From: Schmidtea nova
Taxonomy: Eukaryota
NCBI GenBank assembly: GCA_044892505.1
Contig: CM097883.1
Location: 160,642,001 to 160,706,000, forward strand
Reading direction: 5' to 3'
DNA length: 64,000 bases
The position numbers were made by a program, and so were the translations under genes. Positions 12,727 to 29,059 of the stretch are shown in pieces. Below the pieces are notes generated by a model, which saw nothing but the letters and a program-made list of their open reading frames with translations, was not told the DNA's origin and searched no databases. Every line of letters starts with the position of its first letter. Position 1 is the stretch's first letter.

Positions 12727-12979
12727 AAATCTAATAAACTTTCGATATTAAGTTTATCCTTTCAGAAATTTAATGGACATTTATCAAAGGAAGTAAATTT
12801 TATTAATTAGGAAACATAATTTTCATATTTATGGATAAACAAGTTGGATGGTAATTTTATTTTTAGAGAATGTCGAAGTTTATGGCCGATAGTACTGTCT
12901 TTAAAATTTTAGTGCTAAAGCTTCAGATATACTTAACCAAAATTTCAGGGGGAATCAATTACAATAGAATAAATGTTTG

Positions 12980-14062
12980 TGTTCGGTTCGTATCAGTGGT
13001 TTACGACGAACACAGAAAGTATATATATTTATATATATTTGATTTGATTATCGGACTCCAAACGATAATCCGCTTATATAATTATAAATAAAATATATGT
13101 TTTAGGTTGTGTGTAAAGAAAAACAAGAACTAATTATTTTTTAATAAAATGTATTGTGAAATATGTATATCGATGTACAATATAATAAAATAGCTGCAAA
13201 AGCAAAAGTTAGAGAATCGGTTATACAAACCGTCCTAAGATGTTTAAGAACGAAAGCTGGACCTAAAAGGCTCAACAGCTCCGACTAACTGAAAGGACAC
13301 AAGATGAGGGGTTTCCCTGTAGTTTAACCGCGATAGTGACAACCCAGAATTGGTTGTCACTGTGACTTAATAATTTTCCCTTCTGATAATTTATTATGTA
13401 ATGACTTTACTGAAGGGGAAAAATAGTAATACAACTATTTCCCCGTGATCGATTTATAGAATTTTAAAAGAAACAAAACTAGAAGATTTACCAGCTAATA
13501 AAGATTTTTCCGATTTCGGGAAATTATCACAAATGAAATTCAAGCTAAGCTTCTCGTAATACTTCTGCCGTAAAATTAATTTCTCCAATTCACAAATTTG
13601 TCAAACTAAAATTCTAAAATTCACTTCGGTAAAATTTATGTTCTGTAAACACTTATGTTTCTCTCTCTACTTCTGTCAAAATTAATTTCTGTTTCAACTG
13701 ATTTTGCAATCAGTTTATATACAAATTATTTTCTCTCATGTAGGTCTAGACGACCACCTATTACTAACTACGTGTAGGTCGAAATTGACCTTACAAAATA
13801 TTACTTTTAAAGTAATTTATTATTACTATATATATCTTATTATTACTATTTAAATTTCTTATGTATTTATTTATTACTATATTTATTATATATTATTTAA
13901 TTATTACTATATTTAATCTATATTTATTTATAGTAATTATTTATTTACTATTACTATTTATCTATTTATTTATAGTAATTCTTAATTGCTATTTATATTT
14001 ATTTATTTACTTATAATATTTAATTACAAAAACCCGAGATCCCTTGATCTCGAACCCTAACA
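12980..14062 (-). repeat. 3' LTR (1083 bp)
   Basis: Direct repeat of 26876-27958. PPT is adjacent. Confidence 0.97.
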
Positions 14063-14064
14063 TG

Positions 14065-14074
14065 TCTTCCCCCT
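14065..14074 (-). promoter_or_regulatory. Polypurine tract
   Basis: Minus strand AGGGGGAAGA, 2 nt before the 3' LTR. Confidence 0.85.
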
Positions 14075-14357
14075 AACAAGATTTTCGTCCCGAAAATTAA
14101 AGCGGAAAAGACAAGAAGGTTAAGCAGCCAAAAATAAAAAAAATAAAACAACAACACATGCATATATACATAGAATGCACTTGGTCAAAATGAGTCTCAT
14201 AAAACACATAATACATAATTAATGTTGATCACAATCGATATCAAATAATAATTGTCTGTAAGCGTTGGATTGTTGATCACATAGCCGAAGTGCTAATTGT
14301 TTGATTGATAGTTGTCATAGCTTATAGCTAGACCTTGGATTGAACGTAGCAGAAATG

Positions 14358-16394
14358 CTAGTTATCCTTTGCGAATAGGTTTTGAGCTGCTCTCTTGCGA
14401 ATATGCGCTTGCTCGTTCTTGATGCGATCTTCCACTATATCTGGTCTATAGCTGACCACCAATGTTTCGCGTGTTTCGACTTCCTTATATACCAAAGACG
14501 AAATCACGTATGATTTTCCGTTGGCCTCCAATACGCCATAGTAAGGGAAGTTTGAAACTGATGATTGGTGTACCGGTTTCCCGTCGTATTCTTTTATCCG
14601 AGGTACCCAATTTCTCTCTGGTCGCTGCCAAAAACTAGGGTCTTCATTGTCCAAATCCTGGGGTATCTTTGCTGAATTTCCCGTTCCAACGAAATCCCCT
14701 TCTCTTATAATAATAGGTTCGCCCTTAACCTCCGGAATCTGTTCCATATCGGGTGGGATGAATGCTGTTTCGATTAAATCTTTGTCTTCCGTCGAGATGG
14801 GATTTGGTACTTTCTTTTTGATCTTTAGATCTTGTAACCTTACAACAGGTTCTTGACTTTTCTTTGGGGGTGACTTCTCCACTGAAGTCAATTTTTTAAA
14901 AGTCTTAGTAACTTTTTCCAAGAGCTTGTTCTCTTTCTTTGGTGGATTTTCTGGCACGATCTTTGTAATTGTACGGCTGTCTCCGTGTAAAGTTAAACGC
15001 ATCTCTGTTTGCTCCTCACCCTCGCTTTCGCAGGTGGCGTAATCGTCTTCATCAGCTAAGGATATAGCTGGAGGGGATAGTGATTCTTCCTCAACTATCT
15101 TTTGTAATTTGGTTGATAATGGTTGTTCCTGGGGTAAGCTCTCAATAGCTTTCCTTTTACTCGTTTCTTGTGGCTGTATTGTATGAACCATTTTGACTTC
15201 TGATGTAATTGTCCCACTACGATTACCTGGGGTAATGTCATCTACCCAAACTTCTCTCAGTTTAAGGTAAATATTACGTGTCGTTTCCACGTCATTTTCC
15301 GTTTTCAGATCTGAACGGTTTAGTTCTTCTTTTTCGAGAATTGACTTTGATAAATACGCGAGTCGATAATGTCCGTTACATTTCTTTAGTTCTCTCGCTT
15401 CCAGGCATTTTGCTGCTCCTAGTTCTCTAATGCCCAAAACTCGTTGAGGGTGTAACTGGACTGCTTCCAAGAAATCGTTGACTTGGAGACCTATTAGGAT
15501 TTTCCCATCACATAATTTTCTAATACGGTCTGCGCAATCCTCTCCATCAAATTGTCCGATGATTTCTTTTTCGGTCATACCATGCGCGTGCGATTGGTAA
15601 TGTTTGACCTGGTTTCTGGGTGTAACCACCGTGTTTAGTATTAAATCACCACAGTAGTTTGCTATCGAAACAGCCACCAAAGCTGGCTTTAAATAATCTC
15701 GCAAAGTTGCGTAATGCGCTGCAACAAATATTGACAATCTATCTTCTTGATTGGGGTGCAGATTCATCCGAACAAAGGATTTGAATGATTTGAGATCGTT
15801 CTCATTCACATTATAGGTCCAGGCAGGTTCATTTTTCCACAATGATTGCACTGCCTTGCTAGGTTCCAAAATCTCTAATACCACAATAGTATTATATCCG
15901 TCACATTGGATGGAGATATTCTTTTCTCTGCCATCTCCGTTACTAATTTCTAGAGTTGATTCTGGTTGAAGTAGGATGGGTCCTGTGGCTCCTGCCATGA
16001 AGATTGTAAAGGGTTTATTGATCGCGTGAATCAGGAGATGGTGAGTAAATGTTGATCTGTTGAATTCCGCCATGTGTTCAGTCAACCGGGTGTTCTCACG
16101 GCTGGTGATTGTGACTATGCACATTTGTCTCTTAGGCGATCCGAGAAACTTAAAATTGTTCGGGATGCCGGTGCAGTGCCCGTAATACCAATAGCGACGA
16201 CCTTTCCGTGCCTCTGCGGATATCGCTTTTTCGATGTTTCGATAAATCAGTTTTTCCTTCTGTATTGTTTGCACATCGATAGTGCTATAACGCTGCTTGT
16301 ATTGTGACACTTGATGCTTCATATCTGAAAGAAAAATAATTAACGTTAATATCAGATATACTGATATGCCAATATTGGCTAAAAAGGAATGCAT
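14358..16394 (-). CDS. Accessory ORF2 of the LTR element (678 aa): degenerate AlkB-like domain, degenerate REX4/ISG20-like DEDDh exonuclease domain, charged low-complexity region
   Basis: Long open frame between the polyprotein and the 3' LTR. ALVAVSIANYCGDLILNTVVTPRNQVKHY..HG...KILIG...IRE..L aligns by eye to the REX4 fold. The true start may be the ATG after the splice-acceptor-like TTTCTTTCAG at ~16325. Confidence 0.8.
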   Translation of the reverse strand: MHSFLANIGISVYLILTLIIFLSDMKHQVSQYKQRYSTIDVQTIQKEKLIYRNIEKAISAEARKGRRYWYYGHCTGIPNNFKFLGSPKRQMCIVTITSRENTRLTEHMAEFNRSTFTHHLLIHAINKPFTIFMAGATGPILLQPESTLEISNGDGREKNISIQCDGYNTIVVLEILEPSKAVQSLWKNEPAWTYNVNENDLKSFKSFVRMNLHPNQEDRLSIFVAAHYATLRDYLKPALVAVSIANYCGDLILNTVVTPRNQVKHYQSHAHGMTEKEIIGQFDGEDCADRIRKLCDGKILIGLQVNDFLEAVQLHPQRVLGIRELGAAKCLEARELKKCNGHYRLAYLSKSILEKEELNRSDLKTENDVETTRNIYLKLREVWVDDITPGNRSGTITSEVKMVHTIQPQETSKRKAIESLPQEQPLSTKLQKIVEEESLSPPAISLADEDDYATCESEGEEQTEMRLTLHGDSRTITKIVPENPPKKENKLLEKVTKTFKKLTSVEKSPPKKSQEPVVRLQDLKIKKKVPNPISTEDKDLIETAFIPPDMEQIPEVKGEPIIIREGDFVGTGNSAKIPQDLDNEDPSFWQRPERNWVPRIKEYDGKPVHQSSVSNFPYYGVLEANGKSYVISSLVYKEVETRETLVVSYRPDIVEDRIKNEQAHIRKRAAQNLFAKDN

Positions 16395-16508
16395 AAATCT
16401 CGATTTACGGGATCTACTTATGCTGTAAGTTAATGCTACTCGGAGCTCAACAAGATTATAGATTTTAATATATATATAAATACAAATATGTGATTTTATC
16501 TGTAATTG

Positions 16509-19500
16509 TCATAATCTCGTCATCATAATCCCATCAACCGACTCAATAGCCTGGCTGAAGAATAATTTCATCCAAACTCCCATTGCTATCAATGTAGTGA
16601 TCATAGCTAATACTGCTGACGTAATAATCCATACCCCAACGGGTAATTTTCCCAAGTGAGAAATGGGGTTTACTTCATTAATTTCACACTGACAACTTTT
16701 AATATAGCTTTCTGTTGATACTGTTGGTTTTACCATTTTCAATCCTTTCAATCTCTGCCATATTGCAGGATGAATGACGTAACTCTCTTTCCGTATCAAG
16801 GATGTGACTGATTTCGTTGTCGTCGATGATTGTGGTAATTTCAAAGAGATTACTTCATAAAATACCTCATTCCATTCATCGACTCCGGGCTTTTGTTTAT
16901 TATTCATATAAGTGATATGAGCTTCCCACTCCACTGAGCTGTTCCACTTGAGATTTTGTTTCTCAATATCTTCATTTAGCCACAATTCTTGCACTATTTC
17001 CTTGTCGGAATGGATTTCTATCCTTACCCTATCCACTCCTTGTTTTGGTTGGCTAAAGGTAATCATACCTTGTTGGATATTTATTCTAACTTTCCTTTTG
17101 AAATCTGCTGTCTTCAGCTTCCATTGTGACTTTGAAAAATCTGACCATCGTCCAAACATAAAATGTTGAACAAGTATATCTAACAGATATTCCTTTTCTG
17201 CTCGTAAGTCCTTTATGACTTTCACTCTTGTGTTTGAATCCAATGTAAAATGGAAACAACGTCGTTCGCAAAACGAGAACTTGAATTTGGTATCATTTTC
17301 AGCTAATGATATTATCCTAAATTCCTGAAAAGATCTTCTGAATGCGAGATCTTGGATTTGAACCGCTGTTGGAACAAATGTCTTTACACAGGATATGAGG
17401 CAACTTATTATTACCAAAAATGTAACTGATTTTGGCACGCCTCTTGATCGTAATGGATATCTGTCTGAGACTGATTCTGACCCTTTATCCTCCTTTTTCT
17501 TAATCGGATCTTTCTCCGTGACCGCAACTTTCTTGCATCTGTTAGCATGTACCATTATTGGTTCAGCTTTTCTATTTGCTACTAATTGCAAGATTAAATT
17601 CGTGTCTGTGGTTCTCAAAACCTCATATGGTCCTTTGAAGTTTCTCATTAATTTAGGTGATAAGCCCTTTTTATTATAATGGCTTTCCAACATCACCTTG
17701 TCTCCAACTAACATGCCATGTCCTTTGGCTTTCTTATCATGATAATCTTTCGACGCTTCCTGACTGAATTTTATACTAAGACCTGCTTTTGTCCATGCTT
17801 CTTGCATTCTTTCTCTCATTTCCATGAGATAATCCTCTTGGTCTAAATACTGCGTTGCTTTTGGGAAAAACAACAAATCTATAGGCATTTTACTTTGCCT
17901 TAAATACATGAGATAGAACGGCGTTTGTCCCGTACCCTCATGAACAGCATTTCTGTATGCGAATAGGCATGATGGAATATGTATATCCCAATCCGTTTGC
18001 CCTGAATTTACGTATGATGCTAGCATATTTGCGAGCGTTCCGTTAAATCTCTCTACCAATCCGTCTGTTTGTGGATGGTATGGAGAGGTATTCAGTTTTA
18101 AAATGTCGAAATAATCATTTATTCCTTTTAACAGATTACTCATGAAATCTGCTCCTCTATCTGTAAGTAGTTTTGTAGGTACTCCATACCTAAAAACAAT
18201 TTGCTCTACGAAAATCCTGGCTATCGTATCTGCCTTGTGATTCGGTATCGGATAAGCCTCCGGCCATTTCGTCAAGTAATCGCAAAATACCAATATGTAT
18301 TTGTTACCACTATTTGATTCTTTGAATGGCCCTAAAACATCCATTGCCGTCATTTCCATCGGTGTGGATGGTACTGGCATTGGTTTCATTGGCACATGCG
18401 GTTTCTTCCCCGTATTTCTCCTGGTGATACAGATCTTACATGTCTGACACCATTCTTGTACGTCTTGTTTGATTGTCGGCCAGAAATATTTCTGCTTCAA
18501 CCTTGACAATGTTTTCCTGGAAGACAAATGCCCTCCCAGTGCTCCATCATGATATTGTAACATCAAGGCTTCCCGATATTTCTTAGGGACCATTATGACA
18601 TTATCCCTTACGTCTACATATTTGACTAATCCTTCTTCTAGAATAAATTTGTCTCGATTTTTCTCCCAATATTTATTAAATTCCGTCGGTATGAACTTTG
18701 CTTCTAAAGCCTGTCTGATTTGGTTTATCTCTTCATCCGATTGTTGTGCTGCCATTAAATCCGCGAGTCTGTTTGCTTCTCTTGTAAGTGCGAAGATTGT
18801 TCCTTCTAATCTTCCTTCTTTGACGTCTTCTGCTTCATCACCTTGGTCCATTCGAGAAAATGCATCTGCATTCCCATTTTGGTGTCCTTTACGGTAATGT
18901 ATTTCGATATCGTATGGCTGCAAGATCAATGCCCATCTAACCAATTTTGATGTATCCATAGTATGCTTTGTTAACCACTGTAATGGTCTATGATCCGTAT
19001 ACACAATGATCTTTCGACCCCATAAATATGTCCTGAATTGGTGTATAGCATACACAATTGCTAATGCTTCTAATTCGATAACTGCGTAATTCTTTTCATG
19101 TGGTTTTAATCCTCTGCTAGCATACGCTATTGCATATTCGTCTCCTAGGTCATCTCTTTGACCTAACACAGCACCAATACCCCGAGTGCTGGCGTCCGTC
19201 ATGACCAAAAATTGTTTCTCAAAATCTGGAAACCGTAATATAGGAGGTTCCACGAGCATCCTCTTTAGCATATCAAATGCTTCCTGATGTTCTTTTCCCC
19301 ATACAAATTTGACATTTTTGCCCTCTAATTGTGTCAGAGGAAATGCTATTGCCGAAAAGTTCCTGATGAACTTCCTGTAATATCCCACTAAGCCCAAAAA
19401 CCCTTTTATATGTTTGACTGTCTTTGGCTCTGGAAAATTCTTTGCTTTCTCAACATTTGCTGGATCTGGCTTTACTCCATCCTTCGAGATAATGTGACCG

Positions 19501-22500
19501 ACATAGACTACTTCTGATTCGGCCCATTTACATTTTGATGGTTTTACCTTAAGATTTGCATTAATTAACCTTTTGAATACGTCCTCTAAATGTTCTAAAT
19601 GCTTTTCCAAATCTGGAGAAAATACTATGATGTCATCTATGTATACCATTGCATGATGAACATCCATTAACATTAGATTCATTGCTCTTTGAAACGTTGC
19701 TGGCGCTCCTGTGAGACCAAATGGCATTACTGTATATTCGAAGTGTCCCAGGCTTGTAGAAAAAGCCGTAATTGGTATTGTCTCCTCTTTTAACTTGATT
19801 TGGTAAAATCCCTTCTGAGCATCCATCACTGAAAAATATTTTGAATTTCTCATACGACCGTAGATGTAATCCAGTAATGGTAATGGGTGACTATCCTTGC
19901 AAGTTGCTTCGTTTACCATTCGATAGTCGTTGCATAGTCGTACCGTTCCATCCTTTTTAGCCACTACTATCATTGGTGACTGGTATGGTGATTTACTATG
20001 CCTGATGATGTTATGTTTTAACATCAGTTTTACCTGCTTATCGACAGGTTCTTCCAAGCTAAACGGGATTCGATACGGTCTCAGCTTTATTGGTTTAATA
20101 TTGTTAAGAACAATTTCATGTTCCAACAAGTTCGTCTTTCCCAGATCATATTCGTGCTTGGCGAATACTTGATCATATTTTCTTAACAACATGTTTACTT
20201 GAATATTCTCTCTTCGTGAAAGAGCTTTACTATTTGCCGTTGGCGCATCATAGTACTCGATGTCTGGTTCTCTATTCTCTGCCTTCACTGTCAGGACAGA
20301 TCCCCCAATCGGTAATTGATCCGACTTTGATACTCTCCCTACTCTTGTATCTGGGTACAATTTTAATGGTTTTATATCTAAATTGGCTACCCGAATTGGT
20401 ATTCTGCCATTTTCAACATTACCAACGCTATGCGTAATTGGTAGATTATATTTTGCTGAAAACCTTTCATCTGGTTCGAATACAACTTCTCCTTCCAACT
20501 GTTCGCTAGTGGACACGAAACATACTGTTTCTGCTCTAGGTGGTATTATCATCGTATGGTCGATGAAAACTGTATCATCATTATAAACTTTTCTTTTCTT
20601 ACCGATTGATCTAACTAACAATCCGGTAGCACAGTCAAATACGACTCCTTTTAATCTTCTTAAAAGATCCATTCCTAGTAGACATTCCACTGGACAAGTT
20701 CTCATGACTATAATATCATGACGAAATTCTTGGTCACATAGCTTGATGTTACAAGCTAGAGTACCAATAATATTCAATGATGTGCCTGTAGCACCTGTTA
20801 ACGAAACTCTTGAGGTTTCCATTGATTCCAATTCTTTTTGATTTAATAGTGTTGCCTCTATGATAGTGCCGTCTGCTCCTGAATCTATCACTGCATTAAC
20901 TGTGTGTCTGTTTATTTTTATCTTTATCATGGGTTTCTTATCCAAGTTCACCCCATTTGCCATCAAAATAGTAGCATGCGTTATCCCGATGGTATTTGCT
21001 CTGAATTTCTCTGCTTCATCTTGTTCGGTATCGCTCAATTTTGGATTATATTCCTTGAATTTAGCTTTTATTGCTTCTAACGACTCGATAGGATACAGTT
21101 TCCCTTCATTTTCTAACGATAATGATATGCTTTTACCTGTTTCTCGAGCATCTTTGTCGAGAATTTGTTGATGTTTAGAAATGTACATTTTGTTTCTTTG
21201 AATTGTTAAAGCATAATTTAGTTTGCCCTCTCCTGATGTCTTTTGAAACTCTGGCGATTCCCCCTTTGGCGCTGTTGGTAAGCTTCTAAGATATGGTAAT
21301 TGCATATATCTTGGATTTCTTTTCAATCTAGGCGATGCTGTATTGATTGCAAATTTCTGGTCTGCACTATCGTATTCATCTTCTGAAATCATACTTTTGT
21401 CGAAAATCTGTTTTGTCGCTTCGTAAGGTGGTTGATAATCCCGATATTTCATTTTCCTTAATTGATGATTCGGTTTTTTATTGTAGTTTCTTTTTCGACT
21501 TCTACTTTGTCTCTGAACTGTATTAAGAGAGTCTCCAATACCTCCTCCTTCCGAATTGTTATCGTCCCGATAACTTGTATTACCCTCCATTTCGATTCCA
21601 ATAATCTCGTGTTTTACCAAGCTTCTCTGTTTGATTGTCTTTATTTCTTTACGATGATGTTTAAACAATGCAAATTCCGCACACATAGGACACAATCCTA
21701 GTATCAACTTCCAAGACCATCCACCGATTTTGAATATACTGTATGTGGAGATTAATTGTGTTATTATTAACTTTAGAATTACGAATATTGCATATATTCC
21801 TGAGCAGCCTGCCACGAAAATACCAAAATTGGTAAACCTTCCCCATATTTTCATCATCACATTTTTAGCTGCTTCTTTATAATGATCTGGACCGAATAAT
21901 AAATTGTAATCTGGTCTCATTTCGTTTGCTTGGTAAATTGTTCTTATGATTTCAGTGATACCTCTTTCTCTTACTTGAGGGAATAGCAATGTCTGTCTTG
22001 CCTCCTCAATGTCTGCTGAAGTGTAAATTCCTCCTTGTGATAATTCATCGAGTGATTTAAATTCCATGTTTTCCTCGAGTTTCGTGACTTCCAATGTTTC
22101 CACCTTTCTATTAGATGGTTTTCTGTCAGGTAATGAGATCCATCTATCATTTACCTTGTATAACGGTGATATTGCTGGATTGCAAATTGAAGGTTGAGGC
22201 TTTTGTTTTTCATCCAAAAGTCTCCTCGTAACTGGCATTACAAATCGTATTTTGTTTTGATATGACACTGGTAATTCTAGAGTACATTCGTTATACCGTG
22301 TTAATTGTACCTCTATGGGTTGACATTGATAGCTGTATATAGCTTCCCCCATAATTCTGCCAAACATTCCATCTTCTAGCAACATAGGTGTCACTAGATC
22401 CGGATTCACGATTGATATCGCTAACCGATTTCGAACTATTTCGCGATTTAGTTTGCAATCATTGAGTATTACTTCCTGATACATTTCCTGCATTTGTCCT

Positions 22501-25500
22501 TGCAGATCATGATATAAATAATCTATTTTATTATTTATATAGTTCGTGATTTTGATATCCTGGCTGTGAATATTCTTGGCTTTTTGGATAAATGTTTTTG
22601 ACAAATATAATCCTTTATAGTTGGTCTCGTACACCACTTTTCCGCATTTTGTCTTCTTATCTTTTCTGACAAATCTGATTGCATCTTTCTTATCTTCTGA
22701 TACTAATACTAGAGGTGTGATTTCCTCACTAATATCCTCTTTTTGCTGTTTGTTGATCCTTTTCAACGTCTTTTCTTTATCCCAAATTCTTTCTCTTTTG
22801 GGTAAATCTCGATACTTTGTCCCGTTCAACTTATGGAAATTAATTTTCTTTAGTAATGACAATTCGCAATGGTCTAGTATTTGATCGTATAATAATGTAA
22901 TGACCCCTGTTCTGCAGCTTCCAAATTTCGCAAGGCACTGAGGGTGTGCCATTAATCTACCTGATAATACATCGAACGTCCCTTCGTATTCTCTTAATTC
23001 GATTGAATAGTCCTCAATATCTACGACAAAACTTACCAACTCCGATCCGCGAGTTTTCTTTCTTCCCGTACAGGTACCATCTGATCCGATTGATCCTCCT
23101 CGTGTAATGGTTACTCCCAGTGTTTTTCCTACTTCCGCGGCGATGGTTACCTCGTTATCGATTCTTAAAGTACCTTTTCGAAAGGCGTCTAGACAATCCT
23201 CTGGCAATATGTTGACAGGTCTAGGTATTAGAGTGGCTGATAGAAAAGCAGTATAGCTGTGTGAACCACAATAATATTCAAATGTCGCTCTTTGGACTCT
23301 ACATTCTCTTATCTTAGTTCTGAAAAATTCACTTTCTTGGTAGACATAGTATTCGACCTTTTCTCCTGTTTGGACTTTCTCTGGATATGCCTCTTTGCAC
23401 TCAATTGCATCTACGAGCGAATATATCCGAGCTAACTTTGGATCACTGCAATCAAACGCTGTCATTGTGTTTGTCTGTTTCATTATCCCCATCATTACTA
23501 AAAACATTAATATCATATTTGTCATATTCCCCATTCCTCCATTTCCGAGGTGGTTGTTATTCATAGCCTCTTCCACAAATTCATATCGTGGTTTATGTTT
23601 CTCCTCTTCCCAGAAATTATTTTCACTCATCCACGTTCCGAGATAATGCTCCGTTATCTCCGTGATCTGGTCTATTTCTCGATTAATAAGCTTCTTCTCA
23701 TTGCCTGCGCGGGCTAAAGCATCTTGAATCAACATAGATAATGCTGTCAATATTTTTCCTTTAGATAACCCATCTTGTATGAGTGTCTCTAACATACTCT
23801 GTATCTCGTTTTGCGATACCCCTTTAGGTAATCTCCTCATAGTCTTCGCGATTGACTGTGTCACTTTATCCACTTGAATTCCTTTAATCCGAGTGATCTG
23901 CCATTCTGGCTTTAATATTCCTATGATCTGTTTTAATCTCTTCCATGTCAGAGATTTTTCTGGTATATGCACACCTTCGTCTCTCATATCAACATCCCTG
24001 GCTATTCCTGACAGGGTTTTCATCTGAACCTGTTTAATGGTTTCTTGATTTAATTGCTCCGTTGGTGGAGGTTTCATTTGATCTTTCCTAGGTCTTCCTC
24101 GTCTATCTTTCTTTGTCTGCCATGCTGGCCTGATAGTTTCTACCGCCTGAGAAGTTGAAGCTCCCACGTTAGTTTCCTCATTATTGAGTCTGATTTCCTC
24201 TTCTCCGTGATTATCGGCATCGATATCTACATTAAATGGTTGTGTTTCGACGTTACCAGTGACCATTTCATCTGGTAACCGTAATGCTGACCATTGAGAT
24301 TCAGGTGGCTCTACGGGAATGATTGCTACCGTTGTTGTTTCAAAAGGTAGACATCCCACATCTACTAAATATTCATCATCATCTACTTGCCCTCCATGAA
24401 TCATAATCAAGAATATACCGGTAGTCTGCCCAGTATCTATTAAATCCTTTCTCAACGTTATTACTTTGCTAAAACAACGATATAACCTCGTCATGGGTTC
24501 TTTTCCTGATATTCGAATGTCTAAAGTTATCATGCCTTGTCGGTGTGCTTGATGACGTATTGCTGTTCCATTTTTCCTCATTAACATTTTTATTTCCGTT
24601 TGAAACGAACTAGTTTCCTTTACTACAGGTAGTAGAATAGGAATTATACTCTCCAATGATTCTACTGGTATGCGCAATACCAACATCCAGTCTAATATTT
24701 CCTTGATTGTTTCTCCATCCCTCGGAGATTTCTGCAACTCTATCTTCAGACGTTGCTCTATTTGTTGGACTTCCTCCAACTGTGCAATTTCCATTTGTGT
24801 GAGTAGAAACACACTGTCTTGATCCACTACTGGGACCGATATTCCTGTCAGTTTCGTTGTGAGTTTCGTTACCATTCCTGGTAATACACCATTTTGTAGT
24901 AGTGTTTCCCCAACTACTAACTTTTCTCCATATAAATAAAAATCATATCTATTATGTTTCAATTTCATCATTGTATCTGACAACTTGTCTGTTCGACATC
25001 TTACATTCATGTCGATGTTAAACTCCTGCTCCTGAGGAAGTTTTATGTTTAAATGCGAATCCTGAAGATCCCATTCATGCTCCATTGCAGTTCCTATCTT
25101 TCGTAGGATTTTATGTATGTCGCTATGATACCTTGGATCATCTTCGACCTGAGATATTAATTGTAATATCTTTCCAATTTCACTGTTCTTGATATCACCT
25201 TGTGATAATTTCTCTAATTCTCTAGTCAGTCTCTGCTGATACTCATATCTGGAATCCACCAGTTTTAAACATTTTGCTAGGGTATCTGACCCTTTCTTGG
25301 CCTTTGTTTCCTTGAACAAAGCCTGGTCGAACTCGCTCAGTATGGTACTCATACTGGGTTCGTCATCATTATCAGAATTTGTTTCTGATTCTATTACCTC
25401 ATGATTCTCGCTGCTGGAATCCATGGGTTCACTATTTCCTTGCTCATCTGTGTGAGCATCATGATTTTTCTCAGCTGAAATCATCAAAACTGTTCCTTGC

Positions 25501-26774
25501 CCAACTGTGTGAGCATCATCGCTTTCCTCAATGGGATTCATTATAACTGTTCCTCGCCCATCCATGTGAGCATGATTTTTCTCAGCTGAAATCATAAAAA
25601 CTGTCTCTTGCCCAACTGTGTGAGTCTCATTCTTTTCCTCTATTGTATTCATCAAAACTGTTCCTCGCTCATCTGTGTGAGCATGATTTTTCTCAGCTGA
25701 AATCATAAAAACTGTATCATCTCGATCCATTAGCCGTGCTAATCGATTTTTCTCCTCCTGGATTTCCATTTCCAGTTGTTGCAAATACGTCAATTCTTTA
25801 TCGTGATTGACCATGAACGTAGTTTTTGGCTTGCTGACATTACCACTATTGGTAGTCCTATTATTCGTATTATTACTCTGATTTTGAGGACACGACCTCA
25901 GAATATGCCCGAATTTTCCACATCCGTGACATTTTATCTTTCCTGATGAATTAACATCATCCCTTTTAATATTAAAATTCCCATTCGTTGGGAGATTCCT
26001 AACTCTACAAACTGAAGCAACATGCCCTCTGCGTTTGCATTTATCACACTGCAAGTTCGTGACTCTACAGTTCTCAACACTATGATTATTCATACCACAT
26101 TTAGTACACTGAATACTCCTACGAGTATCAGCTACCTTCTTACTGTGGCAATCTTTTGATATGTGCCCTTTCTTATGGCAGTTAAAACATTCAATGGCTG
26201 GCTTCTCATTATTTATCATAAATGATGTAGCTTTTTCTAAGCTGCTTTCGATTACGACAGCTTTTCTTGTTAATTCCCAAAAATCATCTCCCGTGTGGAG
26301 AATCAATGCATTTCTCATTACATTTGTGAATCCAGCTAATAATTGGTCTTTAACCATAGCTTTAGTTGCATCATTCCAGGTAGTTCTGAGCCCAAACGCT
26401 CTTTCGGCTAATAACAATAATTGGTAGGAAAATTCTCCTACATGTTCATTTGCATTCTGCTTCCTGTGATAAAATTGTTGTCGGAAAATTCTACTTGAAT
26501 CTCCCGGTAATATTCTAGCTGTTAGTGATTCTCTCATCTTTTCCCATGTAGCTGGTTTATCTGCTGCTGGTAACGCCATAATATCATTGTAGTTTTCCCT
26601 TGCCATACCCTTAAGGTAAATTGGCAGTCTTTGTATCATTATCGCATCTGGATACCCATAGGCCTTTGCCATCTGATAATATTCTGACATAAACTCCGGA
26701 AATTCCCCTGGATCTCCGCTAAATGCCTTGACAGGTAAAGCGGGATATCTAGCAAAAACATTTTCCTCAACCAT
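16509..26774 (-). CDS. Gag-glycoprotein-Pol polyprotein (3421 aa): Gag/4xCCHC, ubiquitin-like modules, chuvirus-like glycoprotein, aspartic protease, RT, RNase H, integrase, C-terminal FN3-like membrane protein
   Basis: Open frame. CX2CX4HX4C x4. Protease VIDSGA. RT motifs MPFGLTGAPATFQR and YIDDII. RNase H motifs TDAS, ELEALA and TDHRPL. Integrase HHCC, MDVLGP, TDRG, DGLVERFN and GPY. Confidence 0.97.
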   Translation of the reverse strand: MVEENVFARYPALPVKAFSGDPGEFPEFMSEYYQMAKAYGYPDAIMIQRLPIYLKGMARENYNDIMALPAADKPATWEKMRESLTARILPGDSSRIFRQQFYHRKQNANEHVGEFSYQLLLLAERAFGLRTTWNDATKAMVKDQLLAGFTNVMRNALILHTGDDFWELTRKAVVIESSLEKATSFMINNEKPAIECFNCHKKGHISKDCHSKKVADTRRSIQCTKCGMNNHSVENCRVTNLQCDKCKRRGHVASVCRVRNLPTNGNFNIKRDDVNSSGKIKCHGCGKFGHILRSCPQNQSNNTNNRTTNSGNVSKPKTTFMVNHDKELTYLQQLEMEIQEEKNRLARLMDRDDTVFMISAEKNHAHTDERGTVLMNTIEEKNETHTVGQETVFMISAEKNHAHMDGRGTVIMNPIEESDDAHTVGQGTVLMISAEKNHDAHTDEQGNSEPMDSSSENHEVIESETNSDNDDEPSMSTILSEFDQALFKETKAKKGSDTLAKCLKLVDSRYEYQQRLTRELEKLSQGDIKNSEIGKILQLISQVEDDPRYHSDIHKILRKIGTAMEHEWDLQDSHLNIKLPQEQEFNIDMNVRCRTDKLSDTMMKLKHNRYDFYLYGEKLVVGETLLQNGVLPGMVTKLTTKLTGISVPVVDQDSVFLLTQMEIAQLEEVQQIEQRLKIELQKSPRDGETIKEILDWMLVLRIPVESLESIIPILLPVVKETSSFQTEIKMLMRKNGTAIRHQAHRQGMITLDIRISGKEPMTRLYRCFSKVITLRKDLIDTGQTTGIFLIMIHGGQVDDDEYLVDVGCLPFETTTVAIIPVEPPESQWSALRLPDEMVTGNVETQPFNVDIDADNHGEEEIRLNNEETNVGASTSQAVETIRPAWQTKKDRRGRPRKDQMKPPPTEQLNQETIKQVQMKTLSGIARDVDMRDEGVHIPEKSLTWKRLKQIIGILKPEWQITRIKGIQVDKVTQSIAKTMRRLPKGVSQNEIQSMLETLIQDGLSKGKILTALSMLIQDALARAGNEKKLINREIDQITEITEHYLGTWMSENNFWEEEKHKPRYEFVEEAMNNNHLGNGGMGNMTNMILMFLVMMGIMKQTNTMTAFDCSDPKLARIYSLVDAIECKEAYPEKVQTGEKVEYYVYQESEFFRTKIRECRVQRATFEYYCGSHSYTAFLSATLIPRPVNILPEDCLDAFRKGTLRIDNEVTIAAEVGKTLGVTITRGGSIGSDGTCTGRKKTRGSELVSFVVDIEDYSIELREYEGTFDVLSGRLMAHPQCLAKFGSCRTGVITLLYDQILDHCELSLLKKINFHKLNGTKYRDLPKRERIWDKEKTLKRINKQQKEDISEEITPLVLVSEDKKDAIRFVRKDKKTKCGKVVYETNYKGLYLSKTFIQKAKNIHSQDIKITNYINNKIDYLYHDLQGQMQEMYQEVILNDCKLNREIVRNRLAISIVNPDLVTPMLLEDGMFGRIMGEAIYSYQCQPIEVQLTRYNECTLELPVSYQNKIRFVMPVTRRLLDEKQKPQPSICNPAISPLYKVNDRWISLPDRKPSNRKVETLEVTKLEENMEFKSLDELSQGGIYTSADIEEARQTLLFPQVRERGITEIIRTIYQANEMRPDYNLLFGPDHYKEAAKNVMMKIWGRFTNFGIFVAGCSGIYAIFVILKLIITQLISTYSIFKIGGWSWKLILGLCPMCAEFALFKHHRKEIKTIKQRSLVKHEIIGIEMEGNTSYRDDNNSEGGGIGDSLNTVQRQSRSRKRNYNKKPNHQLRKMKYRDYQPPYEATKQIFDKSMISEDEYDSADQKFAINTASPRLKRNPRYMQLPYLRSLPTAPKGESPEFQKTSGEGKLNYALTIQRNKMYISKHQQILDKDARETGKSISLSLENEGKLYPIESLEAIKAKFKEYNPKLSDTEQDEAEKFRANTIGITHATILMANGVNLDKKPMIKIKINRHTVNAVIDSGADGTIIEATLLNQKELESMETSRVSLTGATGTSLNIIGTLACNIKLCDQEFRHDIIVMRTCPVECLLGMDLLRRLKGVVFDCATGLLVRSIGKKRKVYNDDTVFIDHTMIIPPRAETVCFVSTSEQLEGEVVFEPDERFSAKYNLPITHSVGNVENGRIPIRVANLDIKPLKLYPDTRVGRVSKSDQLPIGGSVLTVKAENREPDIEYYDAPTANSKALSRRENIQVNMLLRKYDQVFAKHEYDLGKTNLLEHEIVLNNIKPIKLRPYRIPFSLEEPVDKQVKLMLKHNIIRHSKSPYQSPMIVVAKKDGTVRLCNDYRMVNEATCKDSHPLPLLDYIYGRMRNSKYFSVMDAQKGFYQIKLKEETIPITAFSTSLGHFEYTVMPFGLTGAPATFQRAMNLMLMDVHHAMVYIDDIIVFSPDLEKHLEHLEDVFKRLINANLKVKPSKCKWAESEVVYVGHIISKDGVKPDPANVEKAKNFPEPKTVKHIKGFLGLVGYYRKFIRNFSAIAFPLTQLEGKNVKFVWGKEHQEAFDMLKRMLVEPPILRFPDFEKQFLVMTDASTRGIGAVLGQRDDLGDEYAIAYASRGLKPHEKNYAVIELEALAIVYAIHQFRTYLWGRKIIVYTDHRPLQWLTKHTMDTSKLVRWALILQPYDIEIHYRKGHQNGNADAFSRMDQGDEAEDVKEGRLEGTIFALTREANRLADLMAAQQSDEEINQIRQALEAKFIPTEFNKYWEKNRDKFILEEGLVKYVDVRDNVIMVPKKYREALMLQYHDGALGGHLSSRKTLSRLKQKYFWPTIKQDVQEWCQTCKICITRRNTGKKPHVPMKPMPVPSTPMEMTAMDVLGPFKESNSGNKYILVFCDYLTKWPEAYPIPNHKADTIARIFVEQIVFRYGVPTKLLTDRGADFMSNLLKGINDYFDILKLNTSPYHPQTDGLVERFNGTLANMLASYVNSGQTDWDIHIPSCLFAYRNAVHEGTGQTPFYLMYLRQSKMPIDLLFFPKATQYLDQEDYLMEMRERMQEAWTKAGLSIKFSQEASKDYHDKKAKGHGMLVGDKVMLESHYNKKGLSPKLMRNFKGPYEVLRTTDTNLILQLVANRKAEPIMVHANRCKKVAVTEKDPIKKKEDKGSESVSDRYPLRSRGVPKSVTFLVIISCLISCVKTFVPTAVQIQDLAFRRSFQEFRIISLAENDTKFKFSFCERRCFHFTLDSNTRVKVIKDLRAEKEYLLDILVQHFMFGRWSDFSKSQWKLKTADFKRKVRINIQQGMITFSQPKQGVDRVRIEIHSDKEIVQELWLNEDIEKQNLKWNSSVEWEAHITYMNNKQKPGVDEWNEVFYEVISLKLPQSSTTTKSVTSLIRKESYVIHPAIWQRLKGLKMVKPTVSTESYIKSCQCEINEVNPISHLGKLPVGVWIITSAVLAMITTLIAMGVWMKLFFSQAIESVDGIMMTRL
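17560..20930 (-). other. pol: Pol region: protease (~20620-20930), dUTPase-like linker (~20335-20575), RT (YIDD at 19632-19643), RNase H, integrase with GPY/F motif
   Basis: Canonical Ty3/Gypsy motifs in PR-RT-RH-IN order, with catalytic residues apparently intact. Confidence 0.95.
21660..23525 (-). other. env: Envelope glycoprotein domain, chuvirus (Jingchuvirales)-like class III fusion protein, inside the polyprotein
   Basis: Hydrophobic signal MILMFLVMMGIM, then TAFDC. Cys-rich ectodomain with YINNKIDYL, CKLNREIVRNRLAIS, GEAIYSYQCQPIEV, CTLELPV, FVMPVTRRL and GGIYT, which I recognise from chuvirus-type glycoproteins. TM segment FGIFVAGCSGIYAIFVILKLII. Confidence 0.8.
25888..26774 (-). other. 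gag: Gag region: capsid-like domain plus four CCHC zinc knuckles
   Basis: LPIYLKGMA...RKQNANEHVGEF gag-like motifs. Knuckles CFNCHKKGHISKDC, CTKCGMNNHSVENC, CDKCKRRGHVASVC and CHGCGKFGHILRSC. Confidence 0.9.
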
Positions 26775-26854
26775 GTTATTCGCAAGTTTTACTTTCGAAC
26801 GAGTTGCTAAAGCTATTTTGTATATATGAAAATATGCCCACTGATAATAATTGT

Positions 26855-26872
26855 ATCACGTCGGGCTCACCA
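26855..26872 (-). promoter_or_regulatory. Primer-binding site, tRNA-Trp type
   Basis: Minus strand TGGTGAGCCCGACGTGAT, 3 nt inside the 5' LTR. One mismatch from the canonical animal tRNA-Trp PBS TGGTGACCCCGACGTGAT. Confidence 0.88.
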
Positions 26873-26875
26873 AAA

Positions 26876-27958
26876 TGTTCGGTTCGTATCAGTGGTTTAC
26901 GACGAACACAGAAAGTATATATATTTATATATATTTGATTTGATTATCGGACTCCAAACGATAATCCGCTTATATAATTATAAATAAAATATATGTTTTA
27001 GGTTGTGTGTAAAGAAAAACAAGAACTAATTATTTTTTAATAAAATGTATTGTGAAATATGTATATCGATGTACAATATAATAAAATAGCTGCAAAAGCA
27101 AAAGTTAGAGAATCGGTTATACAAACCGTCCTAAGATGTTTAAGAACGAAAGCTGGACCTAAAAGGCTCAACAGCTCCGACTAACTGAAAGGACACAAGA
27201 TGAGGGGTTTCCCTGTAGTTTAACCGCGATAGTGACAACCCAGAATTGGTTGTCACTGTGACTTAATAATTTTCCCTTCTGATAATTTATTATGTAATGA
27301 CTTTACTGAAGGGGAAAAATAGTAATACAACTATTTCCCCGTGATCGATTTATAGAATTTTAAAAGAAACAAAACTAGAAGATTTACCAGCTAATAAAGA
27401 TTTTTCCGATTTCGGGAAATTATCACAAATGAAATTCAAGCTAAGCTTCTCGTAATACTTCTGCCGTAAAATTAATTTCTCCAATTCACAAATTTGTCAA
27501 ACTAAAATTCTAAAATTCACTTCGGTAAAATTTATGTTCTGTAAACACTTATGTTTCTCTCTCTACTTCTGTCAAAATTAATTTCTGTTTCAACTGATTT
27601 TGCAATCAGTTTATATACAAATTATTTTCTCTCATGTAGGTCTAGACGACCACCTATTACTAACTACGTGTAGGTCGAAATTGACCTTACAAAATATTAC
27701 TTTTAAAGTAATTTATTATTACTATATATATCTTATTATTACTATTTAAATTTCTTATGTATTTATTTATTACTATATTTATTATATATTATTTAATTAT
27801 TACTATATTTAATCTATATTTATTTATAGTAATTATTTATTTACTATTACTATTTATCTATTTATTTATAGTAATTCTTAATTGCTATTTATATTTATTT
27901 ATTTACTTATAATATTTAATTACAAAAACCCGAGATCCCTTGATCTCGAACCCTAACA
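26876..27958 (-). repeat. 5' LTR (1083 bp)
   Basis: Starts tgttcggttcg and ends gaaccctaaca on the + strand. Same length as 12980-14062, with no mismatch seen by eye. PBS is adjacent. Confidence 0.97.
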
Positions 27959-29059
27959 TTTGTATAAATAATTATTCGCACACTGACAGTTATGGCTCAA
28001 AAAAATTGTTAAACAGGATTTATCTAAATATTTCAACCATTTTCTCAAAATATTTAATCATTTTCTCAAAATATTTAATACCTAAAATTCAATTTATTAA
28101 AATGCAAAAACAATAAAAAATCAAAAAAATTACACAATAACAATTAACAAATAATAGACAATCAAGAACATAGCATTTAGAGCTCTTATTTAAAATTATT
28201 CTCTTATCAATGCATTAACCAAAAACTCCTGTGTATGTGAATAAAGGCAACAAAGTGTTCAGGCGATATTTCTTAAAACTTTGTTTGTATGCAACTTAAT
28301 AGCTCTTCACGGGATCTGAAATAGGCACTTTTAATTTTACCTTTCCAAAGAAAACACTTCAATAGTATTTAATTGAGATGTATAAGATGGAAGAAAAGCA
28401 GTTCTGTGTCCTGCTGCTTCTATTTTATTTTATTATTGATATATTTTTGTGGATTGAGCAATTATCAGCTATAATAACCAGATTAATCAAGTTTCGGTTC
28501 AGTAATTCAAGTAACATGTCACCTATAAATTCTGAAAATAAATTAGTGTTAAAAGCCTCCCTTACTATCTTATAATTAATCACACCATTTCTTGTAATCC
28601 TCGCACATACATAAATGTTCTGGGATGTTATTGATGTGATGGTTTTACAAGATGTAATATTTTATAATAACATTTTGAAATAGAAAACAAAATTCAATCT
28701 TATTTACTTCGACATTAAACTGTGATTTTCATGCGGAACGTGATCGAACATTTTAGTGAAGGGTAATAATTAATAATTTCTTATTAATAAAATATTTTCC
28801 CCTTGCAAGGAAAGATAAACCCTGTATGAAGACAGAAAAGATTTCAACAAAAACAAGACAACATCATCATCAACTCCATATCCACATCGCAATTCATTAG
28901 ATCCAATCTCTTTGCAAGACACAACCGCCTCTCAACCAATAATAAATGCGTTGCCACTTAATAATCCCTCATCGTTACCTCAAAAACCAACTACAGATTA
29001 TAATTTCGATTCATCAATAATTCCAATGCAGGTTTTAACGCAAGATTCAGCTCAAGTTT

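What the first reader, a model, noticed from the sequence alone, without database searches (positions are those of the whole stretch)
12980..27958. Intact, young Ty3/Gypsy element with a gag-ENV-pol single polyprotein: candidate new kind of enveloped endogenous retrovirus
Seen: LTRs with no visible mismatch, TSD, tRNA-Trp PBS, PPT and one uninterrupted 3421-aa ORF. In that ORF a complete signal-peptide/ectodomain/TM glycoprotein sits in frame BETWEEN Gag and protease, and a second membrane protein follows integrase. Known: retroviruses, errantiviruses and env-bearing BEL/Pao elements normally place env downstream of pol. Inference: the polyprotein is threaded through the ER membrane like a flavivirus/alphavirus polyprotein (Gag cytosolic, signal, lumenal G, TM, cytosolic Pol, signal, lumenal FN3, TM). 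It would be cut by host signal peptidase plus the element's protease, giving Gag, Env and Pol from one frame with no frameshift. I do not know a described family with this layout.
Basis: partly seen in the sequence, partly recalled or inferred. Interest (0 to 1): 0.96.

Follow-up and report, generated by a model that had tools for sequence, protein, structure and literature searches.

The report
Intact gag-env-pol Gypsy endogenous retrovirus
This is a freshly inserted, fully intact Ty3/Gypsy retrovirus-like element whose single giant protein carries a complete fusion glycoprotein, captured from a negative-strand RNA virus, between Gag and protease; the layout is real and shared by a whole family, but it has already been described in nematodes, bryozoans and flatworms.

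Summary
On the minus strand, 12980-27958 is an LTR element. It has two 1083-nt LTRs that are 100% identical, TG..CA ends, a 4-bp target duplication, a PBS-like site and a polypurine tract.

ORF1 reads Gag/zinc knuckles, a 780-aa spacer, a hydrophobic signal, a complete Monjiviricetes-type class III fusion glycoprotein (Pfam E 4e-89) with its TM, then PR-RT-RH-IN, then a second hydrophobic/ectodomain/TM module. Pol is closest to Ty3.

The layout is not an assembly artefact. At least 17 diverged public polyproteins place G upstream of RT in the same ORF, and they cluster with the window in a pol tree. All 14 ectodomain cysteines are invariant in the five sequences aligned. The four-segment hydrophobic pattern recurs.

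ORF2 belongs to an ISG20/REXO4-like exonuclease family found downstream in every relative with DNA in hand. The window's copy has lost most catalytic residues.

The novelty claim fails. GAG-ENV-POL Ty3/Gypsy elements with captured RNA-virus glycoproteins are published (Sacco 2022; Chary and Hayashi 2026). The tRNA-Trp and FN3 calls could not be verified. The membrane-threaded polyprotein model is plausible and gains indirect support, but it remains inferred. Verdict: a new member of a known kind, with possibly undescribed accessory modules.

The parts
12976..12979 (.). Target-site duplication (TTTG), 3' side of the element
12980..14062 (-). 3' LTR (1083 nt, TG..CA), 100% identical to the 5' LTR
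14065..14074 (-). Polypurine tract (10-nt purine run, 2 nt upstream of the 3' LTR)
14358..16394 (-). ORF2, 678 aa: a divergent ISG20/REXO4-like DEDDh-exonuclease-fold protein. Four of the five catalytic positions are substituted in this copy. Homology to relatives starts near the second Met (aa 25).
16509..26774 (-). ORF1, 3421 aa, uninterrupted Gag-Env-Pol polyprotein
25869..26774 (-). Gag part (aa 1-302): weak Retrotrans_gag match at 52-126 and several CCHC zinc knuckles at 195-302
23517..25868 (-). Spacer of unknown function (aa 303-1086). It includes a 57-nt (19-aa) tandem repeat at 25436-25715 and is about 25% identical to relatives.
23481..23516 (-). Internal signal-like hydrophobic segment (aa 1087-1098) directly before the G ectodomain
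21822..23480 (-). Class III fusion glycoprotein ectodomain (aa 1099-1651), PF24664 Monjiviricetes_fusion, with 14 invariant Cys
21732..21821 (-). Transmembrane anchor of G (aa 1652-1681)
20943..21731 (-). G cytoplasmic tail plus linker to protease (aa 1682-1944); no domain found
20646..20942 (-). Aspartic protease (aa 1945-2043)
19488..19961 (-). Reverse transcriptase (aa 2272-2429)
18912..19301 (-). RNase H (aa 2492-2621)
18024..18590 (-). Integrase: H2C2 zinc finger and catalytic core (aa 2729-2917)
16557..17441 (-). Post-integrase membrane module: hydrophobic segment (aa 3112-3134), an ectodomain-like stretch of about 240 aa of unknown fold, and a TM (aa 3374-3406)
26855..26872 (-). PBS-like 18-mer beginning TGG, 3 nt downstream of the 5' LTR; tRNA identity untested
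26876..27958 (-). 5' LTR (1083 nt)
27959..27962 (.). Target-site duplication (TTTG), 5' side of the element

Best explanation
The locus is a very recent, structurally intact insertion of a Ty3/Gypsy (Metaviridae-type) endogenous retrovirus. It belongs to a lineage that long ago captured the complete glycoprotein gene of a chuvirus/nyamivirus-like negative-strand RNA virus (a class III fusogen) and keeps it in frame between Gag and protease.

Shown here:
- The element's anatomy.
- The identity of G and Pol.
- That G-before-Pol in one ORF is a conserved trait of a near-monophyletic family.
- That G is under strong constraint.
- That a post-integrase membrane module and a downstream ISG20-like ORF belong to the family.

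Inferred mechanism: the full-length RNA is translated into one polyprotein.
1. Gag and the spacer stay cytosolic.
2. The retained viral signal peptide, now internal, targets the ribosome to the ER, and the G ectodomain enters the lumen.
3. The G anchor stops transfer, so PR-RT-RH-IN is made in the cytosol, tethered to the membrane.
4. A second hydrophobic pair places a small ectodomain in the lumen.
5. Host signal peptidase on the lumenal side and the element's protease on the cytosolic side would release the parts.

This would put Gag, Env and Pol at the same membrane without a frameshift or a spliced env mRNA. ORF2 is an accessory RNA-binding or pseudo-exonuclease protein of unknown role.
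For: - Anatomy.
- Domains: (PF24664 E 4e-89; PR, RT, RH, IN).
- Pol: best solved relative is Ty3 Gag-Pol 7q5b at E 1e-107. This compares with caulimovirus 1e-56, foamy virus 4e-37 and gammaretrovirus 1e-27.
- G fold: the AF2 model (pLDDT 59.6) matches herpesvirus gB in the PDB (E 7e-11). In BFVD it matches chu-, chu-like, xinmo-, nyami- and crusta-virus glycoproteins (E 1e-34 to 1e-27).
- Family: 4 long proteins were found through G. In the pol search, 24 of the top 120 carry PF24664 together with RT/IN.
- Order: G lies upstream of RT in 17 of 17 proteins with both hits. Pfam order was checked in 9 proteins and in locus L006.
- NJ tree of RT-RH-IN: the window sits in an 18-member clade. Sixteen members have G in the same ORF and one has G in the preceding ORF.
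- Constraint: G is 35-54% identical to relatives, close to RT. All 14 ectodomain Cys are invariant.
- Topology: the signal/TM and post-IN hydrophobic pair recur. The Pfam G profile starts at positions 5-7 on the internal hydrophobic segment in relatives. In relatives, ankyrin and ubiquitin-like domains fall in predicted cytosolic parts, and Ig falls after the post-IN hydrophobic segment.
- A Met before the signal is not conserved.
- ORF2 family.
- Published precedent: PMC13524379.
Against: - No expression or protein data exist, so cleavage sites and topology are only predicted from hydropathy. SignalP and DeepTMHMM were not available.
- In some relatives Gag is a separate ORF (L006; probably L004). 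In L005 the polyprotein is split over two frames. A single Gag-Env-Pol translation product is therefore not universal.
- The window's copy has three Met codons just before the signal. This would also fit an internal start or a subgenomic or trans-spliced mRNA.
- The G model is of moderate confidence and its TM-scores are low.
- With identical LTRs, intactness of this one copy says nothing about its own activity.
- The host is unidentified.
- The published nematode sequences could not be compared directly.
Confidence: 0.75

Rival explanations
1. The element is the same, but Env is not made from the Gag-Env-Pol polyprotein. Instead G (alone or as G-Pol) is translated from a subgenomic, spliced or SL-trans-spliced mRNA, or by internal initiation at the Met cluster before the signal. 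The in-frame continuity with Gag would then be incidental, or would serve only Pol expression.
For: The window has three Met codons in the 25 residues before the signal-like segment. Relatives exist in which Gag is a separate ORF and the long ORF starts shortly before G (L006; P0002/L004). Classical errantiviruses express env from a spliced mRNA (established knowledge).
Against: A Met before the signal is absent in P0002 and P0004 and single in P0001 and P0003. There is never a stop between G and PR in the 17 proteins checked, so any such mRNA would still give a G-Pol fusion that needs the same membrane topology and cleavage. Gag-G continuity is kept in ORF1, P0001, P0003, P0004 and P0134.
Confidence: 0.2
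2. The glycoprotein is an inert passenger or an assembly chimera. Under this reading a viral G fragment (an endogenous viral element) was joined to a Gypsy element by nested insertion or misassembly and has no role.
For: Only one copy is visible in the window. The exact protein is not in public collections.
Against: The same order is found in 17 of 17 diverged relatives from independent samples. G is complete from signal to tail against the Pfam profile. It is 35-54% identical to relatives and all 14 Cys are invariant. G-bearing elements cluster in the pol tree. The frame is open over 3421 codons.
Confidence: 0.02
3. It is an Anakin-like BEL/Pao element (a chuvirus G captured by Pao, as in mosquitoes) rather than a Ty3/Gypsy element.
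For: Chuvirus-like G in an LTR element is the hallmark of Anakin (PMC7642597).
Against: No BEL/Pao Pfam families were found. RT_RNaseH, RT_RNaseH_2 and Integrase_H2C2 are present, and Ty3 is by far the best solved relative. G lies upstream of pol, whereas that paper describes env-like genes of BEL/Pao elements as downstream of the polyprotein.
Confidence: 0.02

Closest known systems
GAG-ENV-POL Ty3/Gypsy 'errantiviruses' of Nematoda, Bryozoa and Platyhelminthes (Chary and Hayashi, eLife 2026, PMC13524379) and the nematode ERVs of Sacco et al. 2022 (J Gen Virol 103:1739)
   Same: Ty3/Gypsy pol. A class III (gB-type) Env captured from an RNA virus. Env placed between gag and pol. An ectodomain flanked by a signal or TM and a TM. 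Multiple intact young copies reported.
   Different: Direct sequence comparison was not possible because the Sacco paper and the eLife supplements are not held. The host of the window is unknown. The eLife text does not mention a post-integrase membrane module or an exonuclease-like ORF. From memory only, and not checked, the nematode elements were described as one continuous gag-env-pro-pol ORF with other accessory ORFs.
Anakin (mosquito BEL/Pao elements with a Chuviridae glycoprotein; Dezordi et al. 2020, PMC7642597)
   Same: Capture of a chuvirus-type glycoprotein by an LTR retroelement. Young copies with near-identical LTRs.
   Different: Different superfamily (BEL/Pao against Ty3/Gypsy). 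That paper describes env-like genes of BEL/Pao elements as downstream of the polyprotein. Here G sits between Gag and PR in the same ORF.
Drosophila errantiviruses (gypsy, ZAM, Idefix)
   Same: Ty3/Gypsy elements with an env gene; endogenous retroviruses of invertebrates.
   Different: Their env is F-type (baculovirus F-like, class I), lies downstream of pol as a separate ORF, and is expressed from a spliced mRNA (established knowledge; PMC13524379).
Membrane-threaded polyproteins of flavi- and pestiviruses (works like; not a member)
   Same: One ORF whose internal signal and stop-transfer segments would place alternate parts in the cytosol and the ER lumen. Host signal peptidase would cut on the lumenal side and the element's own protease on the cytosolic side.
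   Different: No sequence relationship. Processing here is only inferred from hydropathy and domain types.
Bdelloid rotifer Juno/Vesta LTR elements with a DEDDy exonuclease ORF3 (Rodriguez et al. 2017, PMC5408684)
   Same: An LTR retroelement carries an extra ORF downstream of pol that encodes a DEDD-superfamily 3'-5' exonuclease domain.
   Different: Here the domain is the DEDDh ISG20/REXO4 type, not DEDDy/RNase D. The window's copy lacks most catalytic residues.

Membership tests
Ty3/Gypsy (Metaviridae-type) LTR retroelement | Two LTRs with TG..CA ends and a 4-6 bp target-site duplication | tested here: met
   1083-nt LTRs, 100% identical, TG..CA, TSD TTTG
Ty3/Gypsy (Metaviridae-type) LTR retroelement | Pol domain order PR-RT-RH-IN | tested here: met
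   Pfam coordinates in ORF1
Ty3/Gypsy (Metaviridae-type) LTR retroelement | RT/RH/IN closer to Ty3/Gypsy than to other reverse-transcribing groups | tested here: met
   Ty3 Gag-Pol 7q5b E 1e-107, far better than caulimo-, spuma-, gamma- and lentiviral entries. Gypsy-type Pfam families RT_RNaseH, RT_RNaseH_2 and Integrase_H2C2 are present.
Ty3/Gypsy (Metaviridae-type) LTR retroelement | PBS complementary to a host tRNA 3' end next to the 5' LTR, and a PPT next to the 3' LTR | tested here: inconclusive
   An 18-mer starting TGG lies 3 nt from the LTR, and a 10-nt purine run lies 2 nt from the 3' LTR. No tRNA sequence was available to test the tRNA-Trp assignment.
Ty3/Gypsy (Metaviridae-type) LTR retroelement | Placement within a named Gypsy clade in an RT phylogeny with reference elements | not tested
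   No reference set (GyDB/Repbase) was at hand. Only an NJ tree of database hits was made.
GAG-ENV-POL Ty3/Gypsy ERVs (Sacco 2022; Chary and Hayashi 2026) | env located between gag and pol | tested here: met
   G at aa 1087-1714, between CCHC (195-302) and PR (1945-2043)
GAG-ENV-POL Ty3/Gypsy ERVs (Sacco 2022; Chary and Hayashi 2026) | Env is a class III (gB-type) fusogen related to glycoproteins of negative-strand RNA viruses | tested here: met
   PF24664 E 4e-89. Foldseek matches gB and chu-, nyami- and xinmo-virus G.
GAG-ENV-POL Ty3/Gypsy ERVs (Sacco 2022; Chary and Hayashi 2026) | Host in Nematoda, Bryozoa or Platyhelminthes | not testable with these tools
   The window's host is unknown. 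Flanks hold only hAT and pogo-like fragments. A relative's contig has animal P4Ha exons.
GAG-ENV-POL Ty3/Gypsy ERVs (Sacco 2022; Chary and Hayashi 2026) | Pol clusters with the published elements | not tested
Class III viral fusion glycoprotein (PF24664 Monjiviricetes_fusion) | Profile match above the curated threshold over the whole ectodomain | tested here: met
   299.7 bits against a cutoff of 27. Relatives match profile positions 5-651 of 653.
Class III viral fusion glycoprotein (PF24664 Monjiviricetes_fusion) | Signal peptide, ectodomain with conserved disulfide cysteines, and a C-terminal TM anchor | tested here: met
   Hydropathy; 14 of 14 Cys invariant in the 5 sequences
Class III viral fusion glycoprotein (PF24664 Monjiviricetes_fusion) | Trimeric fold with fusion loops | tested here: inconclusive
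   A monomer model of moderate confidence (pLDDT 59.6) matches gB/G with probability 1.0 but low TM-scores. Trimer and fusion loops were not examined.
Anakin (BEL/Pao with chuvirus G) | BEL/Pao-type pol | tested here: not met
   Gypsy-type Pfam families and Ty3 as the best relative
DEDDh 3'-5' exonuclease, ISG20/REXO4 type (ORF2) | Sequence-profile similarity to the exonuclease domain | tested here: met
   Family profile against PDB: ISG20L2 E 3.8e-31, ISG20 1.6e-19, SDN1 6.9e-15. 17 of 39 members hit PF00929. The window's ORF2 alone gives no Pfam hit.
DEDDh 3'-5' exonuclease, ISG20/REXO4 type (ORF2) | Five catalytic DEDDh residues | tested here: not met
   Four of the five positions are substituted in the window's ORF2. 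Each position is kept in 23-25 of 39 aligned relatives.
   No Pfam hit at E<=1 and an AF2 pLDDT of 33. Two distant relatives have an Ig_3 domain at the equivalent place, but their tails show no detectable similarity to the window's tail.

The most novel reading that the evidence does not exclude
The window's element and its roughly 20 metagenomic relatives form a distinct, so far undescribed lineage of gag-env-pol metaviruses. The lineage would be defined by three extras beyond the published layout:
- A second, fast-evolving membrane-bracketed ectodomain fused to the C-terminus of integrase. It is Ig-like in some members and could be a second surface or receptor-binding protein.
- A conserved ISG20-like exonuclease or pseudo-exonuclease accessory gene.
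- Lineage-specific cytosolic inserts (ankyrin, ubiquitin-like, dUTPase).

All of this would be expressed through a flavivirus-style membrane-threaded polyprotein.
Probability: 0.3. Interest if true: 0.65.

Novelty: new member of a known kind. Interest (0 to 1): 0.45.

Why it matters
The element is one of the cleanest natural examples of a retrotransposon turned into a retrovirus-like agent by capturing an RNA-virus fusion protein. It has identical LTRs, no breaks, and the complete G kept inside the polyprotein.

The family-level evidence collected here comes from public data:
- G always lies before Pol.
- The ectodomain cysteines are invariant.
- The hydrophobic pattern recurs.
- Domain types match the predicted compartments.

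Together these give an argument for how such a gag-env-pol ORF could deliver Gag, Env and Pol to one membrane.

The post-integrase membrane module and the ISG20-like ORF are accessory features that the literature I could read does not mention. They may interest people who study retroelement evolution and host-virus gene exchange.

It does not open a new category, because the layout has been published.

Tried and rejected
- Exact look-up of ORF1 in public assemblies found nothing, so the host could not be named.
- tRNA and Rfam scans of the window and loci were empty. A full-text search for the PBS string and a pattern search in the loci were also empty. The tRNA-Trp call therefore stays untested.
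- The G piece alone found only one fragment in the word-indexed protein search. Two IMG/VR scans found no relative.
- Aligning the C-terminal piece to whole polyproteins gave a smeared alignment, which I discarded.
I left that row out and did not send it elsewhere. The 3-row model was too poor to use (pLDDT 33), so no fold search was run on it.
- The spacer (aa 460-1086) has no relative among solved structures and no Pfam hit.
- Cluster look-up of ORF2 relatives gave no names.
- Sacco et al. 2022 is not held, nor are the eLife supplements.
- Rejected readings are an assembly chimera or passenger G, and a BEL/Pao (Anakin) identity (see rivals). I also rejected ORF2 as a membrane protein, because its hydrophobic N-terminus is not shared by relatives and homology starts at the second Met.

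I stopped, used it in no tool call, and use it nowhere as evidence.

Full report
**1. Observation**

The window is AT-rich (flanks 21-35% GC) and the candidate region is richer in GC (36-40%).

Direct repeats at 12980-14062 and 26876-27958 are identical over all 1083 nt. They begin TG and end CA, and are flanked by the same four bases, TTTG.

The coding strand is the minus strand. One ORF of 3421 codons runs from 26774 to 16509. A second ORF of 678 codons runs from 16394 to 14358.

Three nt inside the 5' LTR lies an 18-mer that begins TGG (26872-26855). Two nt before the 3' LTR lies a 10-nt purine run (14074-14065).

No stop or frameshift interrupts either ORF. The element therefore has zero breaks.

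**2. Domains of ORF1**

Pfam gives the following:

| Feature | Residues (aa) |
|---|---|
| CCHC zinc knuckles | 195-302 |
| PF24664 Monjiviricetes_fusion (E 4.1e-89) | about 1100-1714 |
| Protease | 1945-2043 |
| Reverse transcriptase | 2272-2429 |
| RNase H | 2492-2621 |
| Integrase | 2729-2917 |

- A weak Retrotrans_gag match lies at 52-126. The knuckles resemble retroviral nucleocapsids.
- Hydropathy shows a short, strongly hydrophobic segment at 1087-1098 directly before the glycoprotein and a TM at 1652-1681 after it. Two more segments follow integrase at 3112-3134 and 3374-3406.
- Residues 303-1086 have no recognisable domain. They include a 19-aa tandem repeat.

**3. What the parts are**

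- **Pol.** The pol piece is far closer to Ty3 Gag-Pol (7q5b, E 1e-107) than to caulimoviral (1e-56), foamy (4e-37), gammaretroviral (1e-27) or lentiviral enzymes. It carries the Gypsy-type Pfam families. I therefore file it under Ty3/Gypsy.
- **Glycoprotein.** An AF2 model built on six sequences has mean pLDDT 59.6. It matches herpesvirus gB in the PDB (probability 1.0, E 7e-11). In the viral library it matches glycoproteins of chuviruses, chu-like, xinmo-, nyami- and crusta-like viruses best (E 1e-34 to 1e-27, 14-20% identity). TM-scores are low, as expected for a multi-domain protein modelled at moderate confidence. Together with the Pfam score this identifies a class III fusogen of the Jingchuvirales/Mononegavirales type.

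**4. Is the layout real, and is it shared?**

- A search with the G region, restricted to long proteins, returned four polyproteins. They are 37-47% identical in G and carry PR, with or without RT, RH and IN.
- Pfam shows the order CCHC-G-PR-RT-RH-IN in P0001 and P0003. P0002 reads G-PR-PR-RT-RH-IN. P0004 reads gag-G-PR.
- A search with the pol region returned 550 long proteins. Those closest to the window in pol (48-56% identity) nearly all carry PF24664. Among the top 120, 24 clusters combine PF24664 with RT/IN.
- Local phmmer with the window's own G and RT pieces found both in 17 proteins. G lies upstream of RT in all 17.
- I built a neighbour-joining tree of RT-RH-IN (94 taxa, 648 columns, no bootstrap). 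The window falls in an 18-member clade. Sixteen members have G in the same ORF and one has it in the preceding ORF. All 23 G-bearing taxa fall in one 32-member clade.
- Along ORF1, G is 35-54% identical to relatives, close to RT and IN at 50-74%. All 14 cysteines of the ectodomain are invariant in the five aligned sequences.

An assembly chimera or an inert passenger is therefore excluded.

**5. Topology model**

- The signal-like segment before G, the anchor after G and the pair of hydrophobic segments after integrase all recur in relatives.
- In relatives the Pfam model of the viral protein starts to align at its positions 5-7, exactly on the internal hydrophobic segment, and runs to positions 650-651 of 653. 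The whole viral gene, from its own signal peptide to its tail, is thus embedded without start or stop.
- Lineage-specific inserts fit the predicted compartments. Ankyrin repeats lie between the G anchor and protease, and a ubiquitin-like hit lies in the Gag-G spacer of P0134. Both are cytosolic-type domains.
- An Ig domain follows directly after the post-integrase hydrophobic segment in P0152 and P0153.
- A Met before the signal is not conserved.

Cleavage by signal peptidase and by the element's protease is inference. Some relatives have Gag in a separate ORF (L006). One has the polyprotein in two frames (L005). The single-product route is therefore not universal.

**6. Post-integrase module**

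- It is conserved in topology but poorly in sequence (14-20% identity; 15-30%).
- The window's tail detectably matches only that of P0003 (E 4e-5). The Ig-bearing tails match only each other.
- The AF2 model is unusable (pLDDT 33).

An Ig-like fold is a reasonable guess, from distant relatives only.

**7. ORF2**

- A full scan of 1.84 billion representatives found 98 relatives.
- A profile of 39 of them matches ISG20L2 (E 3.8e-31), ISG20 and SDN1 among solved structures. Seventeen of the 39 hit Pfam RNase_T.
- Homologues lie directly downstream of the polyprotein in L001, L004, L005 and L006. The P0001 contig also has a 585-aa ORF of unknown family in that position.
- In the window's copy, four of the five DEDDh catalytic positions are substituted. 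Each is kept in 23-25 of the 39 aligned relatives.
- Its hydrophobic N-terminus is not shared by relatives, and homology starts at the second Met.

I read ORF2 as a conserved accessory gene that is probably non-catalytic here. A precedent of a different subtype (DEDDy) exists in rotifer LTR elements (PMC5408684).

**8. Comparison with what is known**

- Capture of a chuvirus glycoprotein by BEL/Pao elements (Anakin) is known (PMC7642597).
- Chary and Hayashi (eLife 2026, PMC13524379) report that Ty3/Gypsy elements of Nematoda, Bryozoa and Platyhelminthes carry only gB-type Env and are arranged GAG-ENV-POL. They also report that chuvirus-like glycoproteins occur next to Gypsy pol genes.
- They cite Sacco et al. 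[quoted passage not shown]
- I could not read the Sacco paper. My recollection that it describes a continuous gag-env-pro-pol ORF is memory, not a tool result.
- The text I could read mentions neither an exonuclease ORF nor a post-integrase membrane module.

The defining trait of the finding is thus published. This locus is a new, very well preserved member. Its accessory modules may be undescribed.

**9. Surroundings**

- No other copy of the element lies in the window. There are only weak LTR-like similarities at 2403-2608 and 46995-47081.
- The flanks hold a hAT dimerisation-domain fragment (29456-29899) and a pogo-like DDE_1 fragment (54696-55154).
- The host is unidentified. It is not human-like in composition. 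A relative's contig carries prolyl-4-hydroxylase exons, which points to an animal host.

**10. Limits and declarations**

- I stopped and used it nowhere.
- The functional test of transmission lies outside what this report may propose.

**Verdict**

- Observation: confirmed.
- Interpretation: partly supported. The architecture holds, the topology is plausible, and the novelty claim does not hold.
- Novelty: new member of a known kind.
- Interest: 0.45.

Noticed in passing
window 14358-16394 (-): A second ORF (678 aa) not mentioned in the finding. It belongs to an ISG20/REXO4-like exonuclease family that sits downstream of the polyprotein in every relative with DNA in hand. This copy has lost four of the five catalytic positions.
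   Followed up: yes
window 25436-25715 (-): A 57-nt (19-aa) tandem repeat of about 5 copies inside the coding Gag-G spacer, in an acidic Ser/Thr/Pro-rich stretch.
   Followed up: partly
window 29456-29899 (+) and 54696-55154 (-): Fragments of DNA transposases in the flanks: a hAT C-terminal dimerisation domain (E 8e-17) and a DDE_1 pogo/Tigger-like endonuclease (E 6e-28).
   Followed up: partly
window 2403-2608 and 46995-47081: Weak (70-77%) similarity to part of the element's LTR. These may be old LTR remnants or AT-rich chance matches.
   Followed up: no
window 13815-14026 and 27711-27922: Degenerate AT-rich tandem repeats (periods 4-57) inside each LTR.
   Followed up: no
P0167 (ENA, 2524 aa, contig 977 kb): A chromodomain-bearing Gypsy polyprotein with a Rhabdo_glycop_FD match after the chromodomain, in the same ORF (gag-pol-chromo-G). 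It looks like a separate case of a class III glycoprotein fused to a Gypsy polyprotein, this time downstream of pol.
   Followed up: partly
P0134, P0194, P0152/P0153, P0002; L005 9624-16787: Lineage-specific inserts in relatives. Ankyrin repeats lie between G and PR (P0134; also present in the second ORF of L005). P0134 has a ubiquitin-like hit in the spacer. P0194 has a dUTPase upstream of G. P0152 and P0153 have an Ig domain after integrase. P0002 has two protease domains.
   Followed up: partly
P0146 (NCBI, 2627 aa): A G-PR-RT-IN polyprotein of this family is deposited as a hypothetical protein of a Flavobacteriaceae metagenome-assembled genome. It is probably a mis-binned eukaryotic contig.
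   Followed up: no
L006 13763-14464: Prolyl-4-hydroxylase alpha N-terminal and TPR exons lie next to a related element. This indicates an animal host for that contig.
   Followed up: no
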